Below, one piece after another: positions 49,359 through 56,125 of a stretch of 64,000 nt of DNA. A program made the translations under genes and the position numbers. This DNA is from Prasinococcaceae sp. CCMP 1430 (Eukaryota > Plantae > Prasinodermophyta), in the NCBI GenBank assembly GCA_013416795.1, contig RQSC01000031.1, positions 62,001-126,000 of the forward strand, written 5' to 3'. Under the pieces are notes generated by a model. It worked only from the letters and a program-made list of their open reading frames with translations. It was not told the origin of the DNA and ran no database searches. How positions within the stretch are numbered: the first letter of the stretch is position 1; the number at the start of each line of letters is the position of its first letter.

Positions 49359-52300
49359 TTATTGCACACCGCCGGCAAAGTATGGATGCTCGAGCGCCTC
49401 ACGGGCAGTAGGCCGGCTGGACGGCCTCCATGAGAGCAACTTGCGCGCGAGGCGCAGCGCCTCGACGTCCCCAGCGAAGCCCACGCCGATGGCGTCTCGT
49501 GCGCGATACATCTCCATCAGTGCTGCGTCGCTGCAGGCGAAGGAGTCCAGCGCGGTGTTGCTGGTGGAGCTTGAGGCAGCGGGGGCAGCGCCGTCGCCCT
49601 CGCCGCTAGCGCTCTCGGCTGTGTCCTCGCGAGGGGGCCACACGCAGGCCTCCATCATCCCACGCAAGAGCACCATGGCCTCGACCTCAGCCTCGCTGTG
49701 CCGCTGGCCCTTGCTGGCAACGAGCCGCGCGCGCGTCCTGGGCGAGATTTCGAACACGTTCGAGTGCCCGAGCGCCAGCTCGAGCATCAGCACACCTACG
49801 CTAAACATGTCGTACTTGGCGGCGAGCGAAGCCGCGAAGCTGCCGCCGCCTCCGTCCAGCGCCGCCCGCCAGCGCGAACGCGCCTCCGCGTCGCCTAATG
49901 GCGCAGTCGCGAACCGCGCCTCGGGCGGTGCGTAGGACATGGTCTGTTGCTGGTCGGATGGCGCCTCGTCCTCGTACATCGAGGAGAGCGTGAAGGCGTC
50001 GATCGCCGAGCCGAAGTCGGCGATGCGCGCGTGGATTCGCACATCTGCTGGGTCGGCATCGCTACCGACCGCGTTGGTGGCCTCCCACCGAATCAGCACG
50101 TTGGCTGGCTTGAGATCCCTATGTGCTATGCCGTGCGCGTGCAATGTGGCCACAGCTTCCAGCAACTGCTGCACGAGATCTCGCTGCACGCCGCGCCACT
50201 CCTGCGATCGCTTGAGAAATTCGAAGTACGAATTCGGGCCGACCACACTGTCGCCTTGCGCCGAGCTGTACATAAGGCTCGCTAGCGAGGCCCCCTCGTC
50301 GCAGAACACGAGCCACTGATTCACACGGTCCGGCGGAGGCACGTCAGTGGTGGCACTCGCGCCCTGTCCTGCCGGCGCCGATCCTTGCGGAGGCTCGGGG
50401 CTCGGGTCCCCAGGCGTCTCGAACGACTCAACGAAGCGCGCGATGTGCGTGAGGTCCGTCGGAGGATGGGACACCGAGGACAGATTGCGGAGGAGCATTC
50501 CAAAGTATGCTTCGCGCCGTCCCGACTCAGACGCTGCAAGGCCCACGGGGTCGTCGCGATCCGCGCCGTTGAGCAAGCGTTTGAGCACGTAGCCGGTGTC
50601 GCAATCGCCTGTGAGGCTCGAAGACTCGCTGCCATCGGCGTCGGCGCCGCGCCAGTGAGAGTGCAGGGGGTGATCAAGCGCGCGCCGGCCAGCCCGCCAC
50701 ACCTCGCCGAATGAGCCAGCGGCAAAAGGCTTGTCCCTGAGGGAGTATTGCCCGTACGTGGCGTCCACAACACCTAGGTAACCGCCTTCGAGACTGTCCG
50801 GCAGCACGCGTTGCTGGTCGTCGAGCACCTGTGCGCGCGCACCGAGGGCGTCTCGGCGCGGATCCGAAGCGACCATATCGAGGAGGGCTACAACTTCGTC
50901 GCGCTCGACCTGGCCGAACGGCGGCTTACCTTCGGCGGCCCCATCTTCGGCCATGAAGAGCGCCACTGCCAGCGACGCGGGAAGTGCCACGGCTGCGCTC
51001 GAGCTCTGGGGCTTCATGCGCGCGCCCGTCGGCGCATCTGGCTCCCCCATCACGTATATGCGCGACATGAGCTCATACGCGTGCGAGGCCCCGCGCGGTG
51101 CGACTACGAAAGCCGCATCGCTCGTCGCCGACGGAATCTGCAGGAGACTTCCGCGGCGCGCGTTGGCGCCGGCCTGGCCGAGCGTAATGGCCACGGCGCC
51201 CAAATTGTCCAGCGATCCATCGATGAGAGCACGCGACACCACCGCCGCCGCCGCTGCACCTGCGCCACTGCTCGCTTCGAGCTCATCCTCGAGAGAGAAG
51301 GCCTCCTCGACGAGGGGATCAGGAGGAATGCCACGATGATGGATGGGCACGACGCTCCCGCGTGCACTCTCCACGCTGGAAGCGTCGGCGCCGACGTGAC
51401 TGGACCCCATCGTGGTCGCGCCTGCATCTGCACTGGCGTCTGGGCCAGGCCCGAGCGCGACCAGATCTGCCGCGTGGACTGCCTGCGGCAGCGAGACAGA
51501 CGCGTGCCGGCGGAAGCGACGGCCCATCGAGGCTGCCAGGGCTACGTCGCACATGGTTTGCATGTCGGTAGCCTCCAACACGCCGTCTGAGACAAGCATA
51601 ATGAGCGCGTTGTCCCATTCGCTGTCGTCAATGTCGAACTCAAAGCCAGAGGTCGCCGCTGTATGCGAGACCACCTCACCAAACGGCACGTCGCCCACAG
51701 CTCGGCTGACTGCCAGGAGCGCATCGCTGCCAGGCATCTGCAGCCGCATGCGCCCCGACGGCATTCGCACGACCTCGCCGCCCGCCGCGCGGATGCGCTC
51801 CTGCTCCGCGGCGTCCGAAGGTGACGGCGAGGCCACGAGCTCTTTCGCCTTGCCGAGCGGCGAGCAGAGCACCGCGCGGGCGTCGCCAAGGGTCGCGACG
51901 CCCAGCGACATGCGCCGGCCGTCGCGCCTCACGGCCACGGCCGCGGCCGTCGCCCCCGCCGGGGAGCCGTCCTCGACGACGTGATGCGACGCCACGAAGC
52001 TCGCGTGCGAGGCCTTGAAGGCCGCGGAGAGCGCGTGGGATAGCTCCGCGGCCCCTATGACCTCGCCATCGCGAGCAGAAGACAGCTCCTTCGCAAGTAG
52101 GCCCGGGAGCTCGTCGGCGACCAGAAGCGCCGCCTCGGCGCCGAAGTGGCCGTCGAGGACCGCGGCAACGCGTGTGTCGTCGGTGTTTCCGAAGTAGCAT
52201 CGGGCCACGTCCTCCTGCGACCTGCGCCGCCCTCGCGCGGCGCGTGCGGCGCACGCGACCTCGAACTCGGACGGCGGCAGCTCCCGCGCCCCCGGCGCGA

Positions 52301-52520
52301 CGCCCGTCCCCCCGCCGCGCTGCGTCGCCAGTGACACCCAGCCCACTCGAGACGCCCGCTCAGCGAGCTCGGGGTGGACGCTATGCAGGAAGCTCGGGAG
52401 AAGCGTTGGCGCCGCCAGCGCCGCGGCGGCGACGGCGATCGCGCACGCCATCGCGCGCACGCGGCGAGAGGCGCCGGCGGTGGTGTCGAGGGCTCCACCC
52501 CCTCGTGCAGCGGTCGCCAT
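49359..52520 (-). CDS. PP2C phosphatase-protein kinase fusion (plant PP2C51-like) with N-terminal TM
   Basis: PP2C motifs SQED, DGHFG, GDAR, SDG, DN; kinase motifs GSFGEVW, HRDLKPAN, DFG, YAPPE. Confidence 0.88.
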   Translation of the reverse strand: MATAARGGGALDTTAGASRRVRAMACAIAVAAAALAAPTLLPSFLHSVHPELAERASRVGWVSLATQRGGGTGVAPGARELPPSEFEVACAARAARGRRRSQEDVARCYFGNTDDTRVAAVLDGHFGAEAALLVADELPGLLAKELSSARDGEVIGAAELSHALSAAFKASHASFVASHHVVEDGSPAGATAAAVAVRRDGRRMSLGVATLGDARAVLCSPLGKAKELVASPSPSDAAEQERIRAAGGEVVRMPSGRMRLQMPGSDALLAVSRAVGDVPFGEVVSHTAATSGFEFDIDDSEWDNALIMLVSDGVLEATDMQTMCDVALAASMGRRFRRHASVSLPQAVHAADLVALGPGPDASADAGATTMGSSHVGADASSVESARGSVVPIHHRGIPPDPLVEEAFSLEDELEASSGAGAAAAAVVSRALIDGSLDNLGAVAITLGQAGANARRGSLLQIPSATSDAAFVVAPRGASHAYELMSRIYVMGEPDAPTGARMKPQSSSAAVALPASLAVALFMAEDGAAEGKPPFGQVERDEVVALLDMVASDPRRDALGARAQVLDDQQRVLPDSLEGGYLGVVDATYGQYSLRDKPFAAGSFGEVWRAGRRALDHPLHSHWRGADADGSESSSLTGDCDTGYVLKRLLNGADRDDPVGLAASESGRREAYFGMLLRNLSSVSHPPTDLTHIARFVESFETPGDPSPEPPQGSAPAGQGASATTDVPPPDRVNQWLVFCDEGASLASLMYSSAQGDSVVGPNSYFEFLKRSQEWRGVQRDLVQQLLEAVATLHAHGIAHRDLKPANVLIRWEATNAVGSDADPADVRIHARIADFGSAIDAFTLSSMYEDEAPSDQQQTMSYAPPEARFATAPLGDAEARSRWRAALDGGGGSFAASLAAKYDMFSVGVLMLELALGHSNVFEISPRTRARLVASKGQRHSEAEVEAMVLLRGMMEACVWPPREDTAESASGEGDGAAPAASSSTSNTALDSFACSDAALMEMYRARDAIGVGFAGDVEALRLARKLLSWRPSSRPTAREALEHPYFAGGVQ

Positions 52521-52543
52521 CTCCGCCGCCGCCGCGCTGCACG

Positions 52544-53065
52544 TCAGCGGAGCTTCCTCCGAGCGCTGCGCGCCGCCAGGAGCTCGCCGGCCTCCTCCTC
52601 CGAGAGCGAGCGCAGAAGCGCGAACTCCGCCGCCGTGGCGTACCGCAGGCCGGTGCGCGGGCACGCGTACTTGGCGGGCGCGCCGCTCAGGTCGCTGTAC
52701 TTTGCGCAGGGATACGTCGACGGCGGCGCCTCGGCGCTCACGTACGTGGCCAGCGGATGGGAGCCGGGAGGATCACCCTCCGCTTTCGCGCCCTCGGCGC
52801 GCGCCCGCGCCTTGGATTTGCCGCCGCTCCGCTTGTCCTCGGCAGCGGCCCGCACGGGCGGCGGGAGCGCCTCGTCGGCCGTCGCGCACGCCAGCGCGGT
52901 GCGCCTCTTCTTGAGCTTCCTCTTGGCGTACTCGGCCGCGCGCGAGTCCGCGGGCGCCTCGGCGCGCGCGGCGAACCGCAGAGTCGGACGGTGGGGGGCG
53001 CGCTGGGGCGCATCGCGCGCGCGCGCGGATGCCACACCGCGCACACGCACAGCCCACCATAGCAC
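52544..53065 (-). CDS. IES6: INO80 subunit IES6/INO80C (YL1-C domain); start approximate
   Basis: TYVSAEAPPSTYPCAKYSDLSGAPAKYACPRTGLRY. Confidence 0.85.
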   Translation of the reverse strand: MLWWAVRVRGVASARARDAPQRAPHRPTLRFAARAEAPADSRAAEYAKRKLKKRRTALACATADEALPPPVRAAAEDKRSGGKSKARARAEGAKAEGDPPGSHPLATYVSAEAPPSTYPCAKYSDLSGAPAKYACPRTGLRYATAAEFALLRSLSEEEAGELLAARSARRKLR

Positions 53066-53110: not shown

Positions 53111-53290
53111 ATGGATGCCAACACCGCCCCTGTCGCGTCGAAGAAGGTCGAGATGATCACGACCGACAGTGGCGAGAGCATGACGCGTGACGCGTTCATG
53201 AAGATGAAGATCGAGGAGCTGCGCGCCAACGGCGGCGCGGCCGTCGCGCAGAACACCGTCCTGGCGGCGCACGCGGGCGAGCGCGCGTGC
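53111..53290 (+). CDS. Short coding-like exon of unknown gene, possibly the first exon of the downstream Kir gene
   Basis: MDANTAPVASKKVEMITTDSGESMTRDAFMKMKIEELR has strong coding codon bias; continuation unclear. Confidence 0.4.
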
Positions 53291-53373
53291 AGGCGCCGGC
53301 GCCAGCAGGAGCTGCGCTGCCGGTGGTGCGGGTGCCAGTGGCGCCCTCGCGTCCTCATTCGCTACTGCCAAGG

Positions 53374-56125
53374 ATGCAGGGACGCCGCGAGAGCGACGCC
53401 GCCGCCGGCGCTGCGTCCGGCGGGGACCGGGCGCCGCCGCGCATACCCCTGCTGCATCATGCGCCGCGGCTCTTCCGCTCCGCGGCAAAAGGGCGCGGCT
53501 TCGCGGACGGGCCCGTGGATGCGCTGCTCAGGCGCGCGCGGCGCAGCGGCTCGGTGGCCGCCGGGCGATCCGCGCAGGTGCGTCCGGTCCAGCGTCGGCC
53601 ACCGCGCCTATTTGCTGGTCAGCTGCGGCCAAGTTGGCACAGCATCGACACTTTTGCTGTAGCGGTGCAGCTGGTTCGATGCGTGCTCTGTTGCGTGCAT
53701 TTGCCTCCGAGTCGCTGACGCGACCACACGCAGGGCACACACTCTGCGCTGCGCTCGCGGCTGGTTAGTGTCGACCACACCACACTGTTCTTTTTCGTGC
53801 TAGAGTCGTCGTGGTTTGTGTGCCTCGTGCTCGCCCTCTTCGTCTATGGTGCGCGCTTAGTACCACCGGCGTATGCATTGCGCTGCCATGTCGCCGCCGC
53901 ATTGCCGCGCGCCAGTCGTTGTGCGCGCCATCAAGTTTGGCACAGCAACAGGCACCGCTGACTTGATTGCGCAAAATGGACATCCGATGCGCCCAGCCGT
54001 GACGATCATCATCGGTGCGGGGCTGGCCGTGACGGTGCCGCTCGAGCAGCCCGACATCGAGGACTACGAGCAGCCACGCCCGTCGCATTGGGTGCTCGCG
54101 TTGCGCTTCTCCTCGAGCAACATCGTGTCGGTGGGCTACGGCGTGGTGCTGCCCGTCGATGACAGAGGTGTGCTTCTCGGGACCTTCGAGCAATTTGTGG
54201 GCGTGCTGGTGAACGTGTTCGTCTTCGCCGTCGTGCTCACCAAGTTCGCCGCGCCGAGCTCTGACCTCGTGTGGAGCTTGTATGCATGTGTCATCGAGCG
54301 TGACGGCGTGCCACACCTTCTGTTGCGCATCGGCAACTTGCGCTGCCACACGCTCTTCCAGCCTGAAATTTCGCTCACGCTGATATGCGAGCGCAAGACA
54401 CGCGAGGGCGAGGCGTATTCGGAGCGCGTGCCTCTACACATTAAAGCCCCACCGCCGACCATCAGTGCCATGCACACCGTCGCGCATGTGATCGACGGCG
54501 CGTCGCCGCTGTATCCGCTGTACAAGAAGCTGCGCAGCAGATCCAGTCACGCGAAAAACGACTCTGACGATGGCTGCACGGCTTGTGGGACGTCCATACA
54601 TGCCTCTTTCGTGGCGCAAGACCCGGTGTACCAGGCGGCGCTGAGCAACACCACCACGTACTACCCGGAGGATATCCTCACCGATGGGAGCGCATTCAAG
54701 TCGCTCATCAAGCTCGACAGGAAGGGCCGGCCCGTCATTGACTGGTCACACTTTGATGAAACCGAGGTGCTGCGCCCCGCGCCGCTCGAGGCCCGCGCTG
54801 CTCTGGAGGCACCCTGCGAGCAAACGCAGTGGGAAAACGCGCGCACGGTAGCGCCGGACGACGGCCGCATCTGGGCGGTGCACGGCGGCATGCGCGTGAG
54901 CTTCGGCCGTGCCGAGGTTGACGGTGTCACGGCACGCACTCCGATGCTGGTGGGCTGCCCCTTCTGCTTCGCGGTGCACCTGTTGCTCGAGGAGGCGGGA
55001 GTGGACCACTCATTTGATCTCATGGACATGATTGATGAGCATCCCGCGTGGTTCAAAGCGAGCGCCCCGTCCGACTCGACGCCGCTGCTACGCGTGCCGC
55101 CGCTCAAGCCGGACGACGCCGACGCTGCAGAGCCAACTTCAACTTGGCTCGATGGTTCCTTCGATGCCATCGCTGACAGACTGGTGCAGGCGGGCGTTCC
55201 TGGAGTTGCACGCGCACTCGGCCAGGGACACGGAGCATCTGCGAGGAGCGCGCGTGAAGGTGCGGAGCTTCATGGCCCTGCATCGCCGCCACACGAGACC
55301 GCATCGGTCACGGCCCTGCAGCTTGCGGCTGTTTCACCCGCCGCCATCGGCGCAGCGCTCAGCGCACAATCGCTCGCCGAGGCGGCCTCCTCGGTGCGTG
55401 AGATCTTCAGGTCGAAGTGCGGGGCGGTGGACACGTCGCAGGAGGCGTTTGTTGACGCGATCGACGCGTCGTTGCAGGCGTGGCAGCGCGCACTCGCCGC
55501 CAACGGCGGCGGCAGCTTCTTAGCGGGCGGCAGTCCCGGGCGTCTCGACTTGGAGTGCGCGACGCAGCTCTTCGCAGGGCTGAGTTTCCTGCAAGCGGGG
55601 ATGGTCGACATCACGGGGCTGAGCCGTAGAAAGAAGGACAGCAGCGCCGACGAGTTCATCAGATACACTCGGTCCTGCCACGCAAAGGGCACCACGCCGG
55701 CGCTGCCGGCGTGGGCACGCGCATACTTCGAGGCGTGGGAGTCCCGTTCCAGCTGGCGTTCGCTGCCGGTGCCGCACATGCCGGTCGCTACGTACCTGCC
55801 GATGATCCGCACGTACCTTGAGAAGCTTCACACCTTTGTGCCTGAGGACGCACTAGATGCACTTGCCGTCACGGTCTGCGCCAACATCCGCCGCATGGTG
55901 CCCGAGGAGAAGTTGAAGCAATGGACCGGACTCGTACCACACGACGAGACCGTGCTGTCGACGGCCGATGGAAAAAGCGAAGATGACGAGGGCGCGCAGC
56001 GCGCGGCCGACCGGCCAGAGGAGGGAGGGGCGAGGGGGCTACATCCGCTGCGGTCGCTCGCCCCGGCGCCCCGGCGCCGCAGGTCCTCGCGTCGCGAGGC
56101 CACGCCATCTGCACTCTGCGTGTGA
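53374..56125 (+). CDS. Inward-rectifier (KirBac-like) K+ channel fused to a DHAR/CLIC-like GST domain; introns 53578-53733 and 53849-53996
   Basis: TM1 SSWFVCLVLALFVYAVTIIIG; filter VSVGYG; Kir cytosolic motifs RDGVPHLLLRIGNLR, TREGE, HVIDGASPL, YYPEDI; then GCPFC...LEE...P.WF and a GST C-terminal domain. Confidence 0.88.

What the first reader, a model, noticed from the sequence alone, without database searches (positions are those of the whole stretch)
53374..56125. Inward-rectifier K+ channel fused to a CPFC DHAR/CLIC-like GST domain: candidate glutathione/ascorbate redox-gated channel
Seen: one uninterrupted frame (53997-56125) carries the Kir pore (VSVGYG, 54125-54142), a complete Kir cytosolic domain, then GCPFC (54956-54967)...LEE...P.WF...P.L and a GST-C region (FLAG...LDL...Y.EAWESRSSW). 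Two spliced upstream exons supply the slide helix and TM1. Known: DHARs use CPFC/CPFS, CLIC channels share this fold, and Kir channels are absent from land plants. I know of no Kir-GST fusion. Inference: a tetrameric channel carrying four thiol-redox modules could couple K+ flux to GSH/ascorbate status. The filter has S in place of the canonical T of TVGYG.
Basis: partly seen in the sequence, partly recalled or inferred. Interest (0 to 1): 0.88.

Follow-up and report, generated by a model that had tools for sequence, protein, structure and literature searches.

The report
Potassium channel fused to glutathione-type redox enzyme
A marine green alga (Prasinoderma coloniale) makes, from one gene, a bacterial-style inward-rectifier potassium channel joined to a dehydroascorbate-reductase-like glutathione enzyme; this design recurs in many marine protists, I found no paper on it, and it probably links potassium flow to the cell's thiol redox state.

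Summary
Exons 53374-53577, 53734-53848 and 53997-56125 (GT-AG introns) translate exactly to the annotated Prasinoderma coloniale protein PRCOL_00004917 (815 aa).

- **Channel half.** Residues about 70-364 are a complete Kir channel, closest to KirBac3.1. The filter reads SVGYG.
- **Enzyme half.** A linker of about 33 residues in the same exon leads to a full GST fold. Sequence profile and predicted structure both place it nearest plant dehydroascorbate reductases, ahead of omega GSTs and CLICs.
- **Not a one-off.** At least 64 protein clusters (under 50% identical) combine Kir with one to five of these modules, in either order. Named sources are Chloropicon, Pycnococcus, Pseudoscourfieldia and two thraustochytrids, one from a transcriptome.
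- **Conserved residues.** The catalytic Cys (46/49 modules), the Trp, the cis-Pro and the capping Asp are near-invariant. So are a family-specific Cys in the Kir CD loop and a terminal hydrophobic-Cys-hydrophobic motif.

Databases call these proteins plain inward rectifiers, and eight full-text searches found no description. Redox or glutathione gating is a reasonable inference but is untested. The ascorbate link is weaker. Many relatives have degenerate filters. Verdict: a real, undescribed variant of a known channel kind.

The parts
53374..53577 (+). Exon 1 (aa 1-68): start codon and disordered cytosolic N-terminus
   Evidence: Joined exons translate exactly to P0002. GT donor at 53578. pLDDT below 50 for residues 1-43.
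53578..53733 (+). Intron 1 (156 nt, GTGCGT...ACGCAG, phase 0)
53734..53848 (+). Exon 2 (aa 69-106 plus the first base of codon 107): slide helix and first part of TM1
   Evidence: Predicted helices 72-77, 83-92 and 95-117. Aligns to the KirBac3.1 N-terminal region.
53849..53996 (+). Intron 2 (148 nt, GTGCGC...GCCCAG, phase 1)
53997..56125 (+). Exon 3 (aa 107-815 plus stop): rest of TM1, pore, TM2, Kir cytoplasmic domain, linker, GST module and tail, all in one exon
   Evidence: The same open frame is present in seven environmental contigs.
54086..54142 (+). Pore helix and selectivity filter (aa 137-155); filter SVGYG at 54128-54142
   Evidence: Aligned to the KirBac3.1 pore helix and TIGYG. 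Coordinates. Family filter census.
54161..54250 (+). TM2 inner helix (aa 162-191) with N179 (54212-54214) at the position of KirBac3.1 L124
   Evidence: Alignment register (F190 = F135, so N179 = L124). N in 18/19 family members.
54260..54769 (+). Kir cytoplasmic beta-rich domain (aa 195-364), including the family-specific Cys223 (54344-54346) in the GNLRC loop
   Evidence: Pfam IRK_C. Predicted strands 197-364 at pLDDT about 88-92. Foldseek to KirBac3.1 gives TM 0.72-0.81 normalised to the target. Cys223 in 17/19 members.
54770..54868 (+). Flexible linker (aa 365-397) between the Kir domain and the GST module
   Evidence: pLDDT below 50 for residues 369-387. No stop and no splice signal is needed. 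Too short to hold a gene boundary.
54869..55189 (+). GST N-terminal thioredoxin-like domain (aa 398-504): CPFC 54956-54967 (Cys427), Trp458 55049-55051, cis-Pro469 55082-55084, Gly-Ser494 55157-55159
   Evidence: Pfam GST_N_2 at 30.9 bits. Alignment to DHAR. Beta-alpha-beta-alpha-beta-beta-alpha topology with Cys427 at the N-terminus of helix 428-439. Conservation counts.
55190..55438 (+). Low-complexity Ala/Ser/Gly-rich insertion (aa 505-587) between the GST N and C domains
   Evidence: Low pLDDT at 527-551. Gapped in most relatives. Environmental amino-acid variants fall here.
55439..55927 (+). GST C-terminal all-helical domain (aa 588-750) with Gly617 and the capping-box Asp624 (55547-55549)
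   Evidence: The family profile aligns this region to the DHAR C-domain. Foldseek to DHARs gives TM 0.6-0.68. D624 in 49/49 and G617 in 47/49 modules.
55928..56125 (+). Disordered C-terminal tail (aa 751-815) ending Leu-Cys-Val (Cys814 at 56117-56119), then the stop at 56123-56125
   Evidence: pLDDT below 50. A terminal hydrophobic-Cys-hydrophobic motif is present in 46/64 GST-bearing family representatives against 6/102 Kir hits without GST.

Best explanation
Shown: one three-exon gene of Prasinoderma coloniale encodes an 815-residue subunit. It has a KirBac-like two-transmembrane pore (filter SVGYG) and a complete Kir cytoplasmic domain. A linker of about 33 residues joins these to a complete GST fold of the dehydroascorbate-reductase (DHAR) type. 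The GST keeps the nucleophilic Cys (CPFC), the Trp, the cis-Pro and the Ser of the glutathione site, and the protein ends in a disordered tail with Leu-Cys-Val.

Inferred: four subunits form a K+-selective, probably weakly rectifying channel, because Asn sits at the rectification-controller position. Four monomeric DHAR-like modules hang below the cytoplasmic domain. There they bind glutathione and cycle Cys427 between thiol, sulfenate and mixed-disulfide states. They may also add glutathione to, or remove it from, the family-specific Cys223 in the gating CD loop or the tail Cys814. The state of the module is passed to the cytoplasmic domain and shifts the gate. K+ flux would then follow the cytosolic glutathione/thiol redox state. 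This would be a covalently fused counterpart of Kv-beta on Kv channels, or of glutathione control of bacterial Kef.
For: Architecture:
- The exons translate exactly to the annotated protein.
- IRK_C and GST_N_2 both score above the Pfam cut-offs.
- KirBac3.1 matches at E 1.5e-16, with fold TM 0.72-0.81.
- The GST-module profile hits DHARs at E 6e-25 to 2e-19, ahead of TDR1, omega GSTs and CLICs.
- The AF2 model of the module has pTM 0.75, and its top Foldseek hits are DHARs.

Functional coupling:
- Kir plus this module recurs in at least 64 clusters under 50% identical. They carry 1 to 5 modules, placed before, after or on both sides of the channel.
- The sources span green algae and stramenopiles, and include a transcript-derived ORF.

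Chemistry:
- The catalytic Cys is kept in 46/49 modules, the Trp in 49/49, the cis-Pro in 48/49, Ser/Thr at the gamma-glutamyl site in 38/49, and the capping Asp in 49/49.
- Cys427 sits at the N-terminus of helix alpha-1, as in all Cys-GSTs.
- Extra conserved thiols are Cys223 (17/19) and the terminal Cys (46/64).
- DHARs are monomers (PMC4138524), which fits four-fold symmetry.
- Environmental variants change only loops, the insertion and the tail.
Against: - There are no functional data of any kind.
- The monomer model does not place the GST module against the Kir domain (pTM 0.46, disordered linker), so no gating interface is shown.
- The P. coloniale module has Glu-His where most relatives and DHARs have the glutathione-contacting Lys. 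It also carries an insertion of about 85 residues.
- Only 17/57 GST-bearing relatives have a canonical filter. The family as a whole may not be about K+ selectivity.
- Arrays of up to five modules look more like enzyme or scaffold arrays than a single sensor.
- Within-species substitution counts are too few to measure selection.
Confidence: 0.5

Rival explanations
1. Tethered enzyme. The DHAR-like module is an active reductase or thiol transferase that the channel merely anchors at a membrane. It recycles ascorbate or repairs oxidised thiols locally, and K+ conduction is not regulated by it.
For: The catalytic and glutathione-site residues are conserved, as expected for an enzyme. Relatives carry 2-5 tandem modules, which raises local enzyme dose rather than sensor logic. 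Lallement et al. list no stand-alone DHAR in Micromonas or Ostreococcus (PMC4138524), so some picoalgae may keep DHAR-type chemistry in other forms.
Against: The partner is always a Kir channel, in several independent domain orders. That is hard to explain by anchoring alone. The family also conserves a Cys in the Kir gating loop.
Confidence: 0.2
2. Non-redox accessory domain. The GST fold serves as a ligand-binding, assembly or trafficking domain, as in eEF1B-gamma or the GST-like domains of aminoacyl-tRNA synthetases. The Cys would be a structural relic or a metal or lipid site.
For: GST-like domains are widely reused as interaction modules (general knowledge). The P. coloniale copy lacks the DKP Lys and carries a large insertion. 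The conserved terminal hydrophobic-Cys-hydrophobic motif could be a lipidation or PDZ-type signal.
Against: The nucleophilic Cys, the cis-Pro and the Ser/Thr of the glutathione site are kept together in nearly all of 49 modules under about 25% identical. That pattern argues for retained glutathione chemistry.
Confidence: 0.15
3. Not a K+ channel. The pore is non-selective or non-conducting, and the protein acts mainly as a membrane scaffold or sensor.
For: Forty of 57 GST-bearing relatives have non-canonical filters such as TMSGG, TMSWG, TMSEG or TGGPG.
Against: The P. coloniale protein itself has SVGYG, an intact pore helix, a TM2 glycine and a complete cytoplasmic domain. From memory, Ser at this position occurs in K+-selective hERG/EAG channels.
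Confidence: 0.08
4. Artefact. Two neighbouring genes (a Kir and a DHAR) were merged because stop codons are rare in this 65-70% G+C genome, or because of a misassembly.
For: Long spurious ORFs abound in this window on both strands.
Against: Only about 33 residues separate the last Kir strand from the first GST strand, and both lie inside one exon. Seven independent environmental contigs keep the frame. The same fusion is seen in dozens of distant species and in an MMETSP transcript.
Confidence: 0.02

Closest known systems
KirBac3.1 and KirBac1.1 (prokaryotic inward rectifiers) and the Kir family in general
   Same: Slide helix, two TM helices, pore helix with a GYG filter, and a beta-rich cytoplasmic domain. 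KirBac3.1 is the best PDB match by sequence (E 1.5e-16) and by fold (TM 0.72-0.81).
   Different: The protein is eukaryotic and its gene is spliced. The filter is SVGYG, where the family consensus is TMGFG. The C-terminal end of TM2 reads TKFAAPSS, so the basic PIP2 cluster of animal Kir is missing. There is a family-specific Cys in the CD loop. A 450-residue extension carries a GST fold, which no described Kir has.
Plant and algal dehydroascorbate reductases (e.g. AtDHAR2 5LOL, OsDHAR 5D9T, CrDHAR 5XFT)
   Same: Closest GST class by profile (E 6e-25 to 2e-19) and by structure. Shared features are the CPFC/S motif, a strand plus long loop before the Cys, the KP.WF motif, the cis-Pro, the D/G-S motif and the FL.G...D motif of the C-domain. 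DHARs are monomeric (PMC4138524).
   Different: Here the module is a domain of a membrane protein, not a soluble enzyme of about 215 residues. Identity is about 15-18%. The P. coloniale copy has Glu-His in place of the Lys, an insertion of about 85 residues and a 65-residue tail. DHAR activity is untested.
CLIC proteins (chloride intracellular channels)
   Same: Cys-GST fold with CPFS/C and a similar loop before the Cys. They are a second link between a GST fold and ion channels. Thraustochytrid relatives hit Pfam CLIC-like_N.
   Different: In CLICs the GST fold itself is proposed to insert and conduct. Here a conventional Kir pore does the conducting. CLICs score far below DHARs against the family profile (about 1e-10). 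CLICs are restricted to animals (PMC4138524).
Kv-beta subunits (aldo-keto reductases) on Kv1/Kv4 channels (from memory)
   Same: Four copies of an oxidoreductase-fold module sit under the cytoplasmic face of a tetrameric K+ channel. They are thought to couple cofactor redox state to gating.
   Different: Kv-beta is a separate polypeptide that binds NADPH, on a voltage-gated channel. Here the module is fused, is glutathione-type, and sits on a Kir.
Bacterial KefC/KefB with KefF/KefG, and S-glutathionylation of Kir6.1 and Kir4.1-5.1 (from memory)
   Same: They set a precedent that glutathione or glutathione adducts gate K+ flux, and that glutathionylation of a Kir cysteine closes the channel.
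   Different: Kef is a CPA2 antiporter-type system gated through a KTN domain. Mammalian Kir glutathionylation uses no built-in enzyme.

Membership tests
Kir (inward-rectifier K+ channel, Pfam IRK / IRK_C) | Beta-rich cytoplasmic C-terminal domain (IRK_C) | tested here: met
   PF17655 at 44.7 bits against a cut-off of 22.5. Strands 197-364 are predicted at high confidence. The fold matches whole KirBac3.1 chains.
Kir (inward-rectifier K+ channel, Pfam IRK / IRK_C) | Two TM helices flanking a pore helix, and a T/S-x-G-Y/F-G selectivity filter | tested here: met
   SVGYG at 54128-54142 aligns to TIGYG of KirBac3.1. Helices 95-117 and 162-191 are predicted. The Pfam IRK transmembrane model itself did not hit, and Ion_trans_2 scored 20.4 bits, just below its 22.5 cut-off.
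Kir (inward-rectifier K+ channel, Pfam IRK / IRK_C) | Amphipathic slide helix before TM1 | tested here: inconclusive
   Helices 72-77 and 83-92 are predicted upstream of TM1, and the KirBac1.1 alignment starts at residue 68. Confidence is only moderate.
Kir (inward-rectifier K+ channel, Pfam IRK / IRK_C) | Acidic rectification controller in TM2 (Kir2.1 D172) for strong rectification | tested here: not met
   N179 occupies the position of KirBac3.1 L124 (register). From memory, this is the D172 / ROMK N171 position. A weak rectifier is therefore expected. This feature defines strong rectifiers, not the family.
Kir (inward-rectifier K+ channel, Pfam IRK / IRK_C) | K+-selective, inwardly rectifying current; tetramer | not testable with these tools
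   Needs electrophysiology. No multimer modelling was available.
DHAR class of Cys-GSTs | Complete GST fold (thioredoxin-like N domain plus helical C domain) | tested here: met
   AF2 pTM 0.75. Foldseek top hits are DHARs, TM 0.6-0.68. The profile aligns both domains.
DHAR class of Cys-GSTs | Catalytic Cys in CPFC/CPFS at the N-terminus of helix alpha-1 | tested here: met
   CPFC at aa 427-430, directly before helix 428-439. Cys is kept in 46/49 modules. The fourth residue is C 21, S 19, T 6, A 3.
DHAR class of Cys-GSTs | Glutathione-site residues: Lys of D-K-P, cis-Pro, Asp/Glu-Ser at alpha-3 | tested here: inconclusive
   The cis-Pro469 and Ser494 are present. The Lys is present in 35/49 modules but is Glu-His in P. 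coloniale. Asp is replaced by Gly before the Ser.
DHAR class of Cys-GSTs | Closest relatives are DHARs rather than other GST classes | tested here: met
   The top nine PDB profile hits are all DHARs (92-74 bits). Then come TDR1 at 69, omega GSTs at 59 or less, and CLICs at 45 or less. No tree with reference classes was built.
DHAR class of Cys-GSTs | Soluble monomer of about 210-220 residues with GSH-dependent dehydroascorbate reductase activity | tested here: not met
   It is a domain of an 815-residue membrane protein with a large insertion. Activity cannot be tested here. I therefore file it as DHAR-like, not as a DHAR.
CLIC | CLIC-like N domain with a membrane-insertion segment; restricted to animals | tested here: not met
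   The P. coloniale protein has no PF22441 hit. CLICs rank well below DHARs. CLICs are absent from plants (PMC4138524).

The most novel reading that the evidence does not exclude
These proteins are a new class of eukaryotic K+ (or cation) channels gated by built-in glutathione chemistry. The fused DHAR-like module reads or catalyses the thiol state of three conserved cysteines: the GST nucleophile Cys427, the Kir CD-loop Cys223, and a swinging-arm Cys at the penultimate residue of a disordered tail. Oxidative stress or glutathione depletion would then directly open or close the pore. This would be the first channel with a covalently integrated redox enzyme as its gating domain, and it would be widespread in marine picoeukaryotes.
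Probability: 0.3. Interest if true: 0.88.

Novelty: new variant of a known kind. Interest (0 to 1): 0.72.

Why it matters
Kir channels are known to be tuned through their cytoplasmic domain by PIP2, ATP, G-proteins and Na+. A Kir with an enzyme-type glutathione module fused to that domain would add direct thiol-redox control.

It would also give a compact, genetically encoded model of redox-to-electrical coupling, comparable to Kv-beta but in one polypeptide. Monothiol chemistry makes it easy to probe by mutation.

The family is abundant in ocean metagenomes. It occurs in ecologically important picoalgae and in thraustochytrids. It may therefore bear on how these cells tie K+ and osmotic homeostasis to light or oxidative stress.

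It also shows that DHAR-type GSTs are not confined to soluble ascorbate-recycling enzymes of the green lineage.

Tried and rejected
- **Word-indexed homology searches.** The full ORF, the family alignment and the module alignment returned few or no named relatives. The exhaustive representative search was what revealed the family.
- **Selection within the species.** The environmental haplotypes differ at only about 10-30 codons (for example 19 synonymous against 10 non-synonymous). No reliable dN/dS per domain could be given.
- **Upstream ATG at 53111.** Another first-stage note used it as the start. It opens a different frame, has no Pfam hit and is not part of the annotated model. I did not include it; whether it is a uORF or a 5' exon is open.
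- **Full-length monomer model.** The domains are confident but their mutual placement is not (pTM 0.46). I make no claim about a GST-Kir interface.
- **Literature.** Eight full-text searches combined Kir / inward rectifier / potassium channel with GST, DHAR, algae, Ostreococcus, Micromonas, prasinophyte or Prasinoderma. None found a description. 'Kir-like' in plant papers refers to KCO3, which is unrelated.
- **NCBIfam.** No hit.
- **Taxon of the large metagenome contigs.** The organism behind clusters P0020 and P0035 (WGS prefix MDSY01) was not resolved.
- **Merged-genes artefact.** Considered and rejected; see the rival explanations.
Full report
**1. What is in the sequence**

The + strand carries an uninterrupted frame from 53873 to 56125.

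Reading the three frames upstream gives two further exons with canonical GT-AG introns. Joining 53374-53577, 53734-53848 and 53997-56125 yields 815 codons with no internal stop. The product is identical to PRCOL_00004917-RA of Prasinoderma coloniale, held in EukProt. The window is therefore nuclear DNA of this marine picoalga.

The neighbours are ordinary eukaryotic genes on the other strand: a YL1_C protein and a PP2C-kinase fusion.

**2. The two halves**

Pfam finds IRK_C (E 1.5e-11) and GST_N_2 (30.9 bits, above its cut-off of 25) in the same ORF. Ion_trans_2 falls just below threshold, and GST_C_2 is weak on this single sequence.

Channel half:
- Residues 68-291 align to KirBac3.1 and KirBac1.1 (best E 1.5e-16), ahead of animal Kir2, Kir3 and Kir6.
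- An AlphaFold model built on a 19-sequence alignment gives the transmembrane and cytoplasmic domains pLDDT of about 85-96.
- Foldseek superposes the model on whole KirBac3.1 chains at TM 0.72-0.81.
- The filter is SVGYG (54128-54142).
- Using the register (F190 = F135 of KirBac3.1), the near-invariant N179 falls on KirBac3.1 L124. From memory, this is the Kir2.1 D172 / ROMK N171 'rectification controller' position. I therefore expect a weak rectifier.

Enzyme half:
- On its own, the P. coloniale sequence only weakly finds DHARs (E 0.0035, with CPFC aligned).
- A profile of 49 homologous modules (A2) hits nine plant and algal DHAR structures first (E 6e-25 to 2e-19). Both the N-terminal and the C-terminal GST domains align. 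Leishmania TDR1, omega GSTs and CLICs (about 1e-10) follow.
- The AF2 model of residues 391-815 (pTM 0.75) has the canonical beta-alpha-beta-alpha-beta-beta-alpha N domain plus a helical C domain. Its best Foldseek matches are again DHARs (TM 0.6-0.68), then omega GSTs.
- Cys427 sits at the N-terminus of helix alpha-1, Pro469 sits before strand beta-3, and Ser494 sits at the start of alpha-3.

Join and tail:
- The last Kir strand (362-364) and the first GST strand (398-406) are separated by a linker of about 33 residues, partly disordered, inside the same exon.
- The last 65 residues are disordered.

**3. Is the fusion real and selected?**

- Seven environmental contigs about 97.5-99% identical at the protein level (five Tara/ENA, two Logan) keep the whole frame. 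Their amino-acid differences lie in loops, the low-complexity insertion and the tail, and never at the key residues. The substitutions are too few for a dN/dS estimate.
- The decisive evidence is comparative. An exhaustive HMMER search of 1.84 billion representatives found 785 relatives.
- Among the 166 family sequences examined (150 best representatives and 16), 64 also contain this GST module.
- All nine of the best representative hits that I scanned have IRK_C plus GST_N_2 or GST_C_2.
- Named members come from Chloropicon primus (two genes), Pycnococcus provasolii, Pseudoscourfieldia marina, the thraustochytrid Hondaea fermentalgiana, and an MMETSP transcript of Thraustochytrium sp. LLF1b. 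The transcript-derived ORF carries IRK_C, GST_N_2, CLIC-like_N and GST_C_2. This shows the architecture at the mRNA level in a relative.
- The module occurs once, twice, four or five times, and before, after or on both sides of the channel. Repeated, rearranged association with the same partner is the classic signature of functional coupling. It excludes a gene-merging artefact.

**4. What is conserved**

Across 49 modules that average under 25% identity to the P. coloniale one:

| Feature | Count |
|---|---|
| Nucleophilic Cys | 46/49 |
| Trp of KP.W | 49/49 |
| cis-Pro | 48/49 |
| Asp450 | 45/49 |
| Lys of D-K-P | 35/49 (Glu-His in P. coloniale) |
| Ser/Thr at the gamma-glutamyl site | 38/49 |
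| GST capping-box Asp | 49/49 |

The fourth residue of the motif is C, S, T or A, so the chemistry is monothiol, as in DHAR, CLIC and omega GSTs.

Two further cysteines are specific to the family:
- Cys223, in the GNLRC loop of the Kir cytoplasmic domain, is kept in 17/19 members. From memory, this is the CD loop, which carries the Na+, PIP2 and ATP determinants of Kir3, Kir2 and Kir6.
- A Cys sits at the penultimate residue in a hydrophobic-Cys-hydrophobic ending. It is present in 46/64 GST-bearing representatives against 6/102 Kir hits without GST, and it is there whichever domain comes last.

By contrast, the selectivity filter is degenerate in much of the family. Only 17/57 GST-bearing members have [TS][VILM]G[YF]G, against 64/85 of the other Kir hits. 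The P. coloniale protein is one of the canonical ones.

**5. Mechanism**

Shown:
- A Kir pore and cytoplasmic domain are covalently linked to a DHAR-type Cys-GST whose glutathione site is under strong constraint.

Inferred:
- The protein assembles as a tetramer. DHARs are monomeric (PMC4138524), so four modules can follow four-fold symmetry.
- It is K+ selective.
- The glutathione or redox state of the module, or its action on Cys223 or Cys814, is transmitted to the cytoplasmic domain that controls Kir gating.

I put about 0.5 on this regulatory reading. The alternatives are a tethered enzyme with no gating role (about 0.2), a non-redox accessory domain (about 0.15), this copy not being a K+ channel (about 0.08), and an artefact (about 0.02).

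The family occurs in heterotrophic thraustochytrids, and the P. coloniale copy lacks the DKP lysine. I therefore regard a general glutathione/thiol link as more likely than a specific ascorbate link.

**6. Comparison with what is known, and novelty**

The closest families are KirBac/Kir for the channel and DHAR for the module. The protein passes the structural tests for both. It fails the 'soluble monomeric enzyme of about 215 residues' definition of a DHAR, so it is DHAR-like rather than a DHAR.

Functional analogues, all from memory, are Kv-beta aldo-keto reductases on Kv channels, glutathione-gated bacterial Kef systems, and S-glutathionylation of Kir6.1.

The proteins are already in public databases. 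They are named only 'inward rectifier potassium channel', 'GST N-terminal domain-containing protein' or 'hypothetical'. Eight full-text searches of about 8.4 million papers found no description of a Kir-GST or Kir-DHAR architecture. The review of plant Cys-GSTs does not mention one.

I therefore class it as a new variant of a known kind. It is real, widespread and undescribed, and its function is still to be shown.

Noticed in passing
56114-56122 (Leu-Cys-Val end of the protein) and the C-termini of relatives P0015-P0224: Nearly all complete family members end in hydrophobic-Cys-hydrophobic (LCV, ICI, LCL, FCI and similar). The count is 46/64 GST-bearing representatives against 6/102 Kir hits without GST, and the motif is there whether the last domain is the GST or the Kir. 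It does not fit a CaaX box. It could be a lipidation site, a class II PDZ-type ligand or a resolving cysteine.
   Followed up: partly
54344-54346 (Cys223) in the Kir cytoplasmic domain: There is a family-specific Cys in the GNLRC loop (17/19 members), where KirBac3.1 has Ile. From memory, this is the CD loop used by Na+, PIP2 and ATP in animal Kir channels. It is a candidate target for glutathionylation.
   Followed up: partly
Relatives P0014, P0019, P0212, P0040, P0043, P0047, P0065 (no window coordinates): The domain arrangements vary widely. P0014 has five tandem DHAR-like modules after the Kir. Chloropicon P0019 has two modules before it. P0212 and P0065 have modules on both sides. The thraustochytrid proteins have four module fragments.
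   Followed up: partly
Family-wide; filter column aligned to 54128-54142: Most GST-bearing relatives have non-canonical filters (TMGFG is the most frequent; others include TMSGG, TMSWG, TMSEG and TGGPG). Only 17/57 are canonical, against 64/85 of Kir hits without GST. Selectivity may have been relaxed or altered in this clade.
   Followed up: partly
49362-52664 (- strand): A 1101-codon ORF combines an N-terminal PP2C phosphatase domain (E 5e-26) with a C-terminal protein kinase domain (E 1e-19). It is a phosphatase-kinase fusion.
   Followed up: no
52547-53065 (- strand): An ORF with a YL1_C domain (E 1.2e-9) is probably a SWR1/INO80-type chromatin-complex subunit. It is transcribed divergently from the channel gene.
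   Followed up: no
53111-53373 (+ strand): An ATG-initiated ORF lies just upstream of the annotated start, in another frame, with no Pfam hit. Prokaryote-style gene callers on metagenome contigs call it as a 187-residue protein. It could be a uORF, an unannotated 5' exon or noise.
   Followed up: partly
55190-55438: An Ala/Ser/Gly-rich insertion of about 85 residues separates the GST N and C domains. It is largely specific to P. coloniale, is predicted to be disordered, and is where environmental variants differ.
   Followed up: partly
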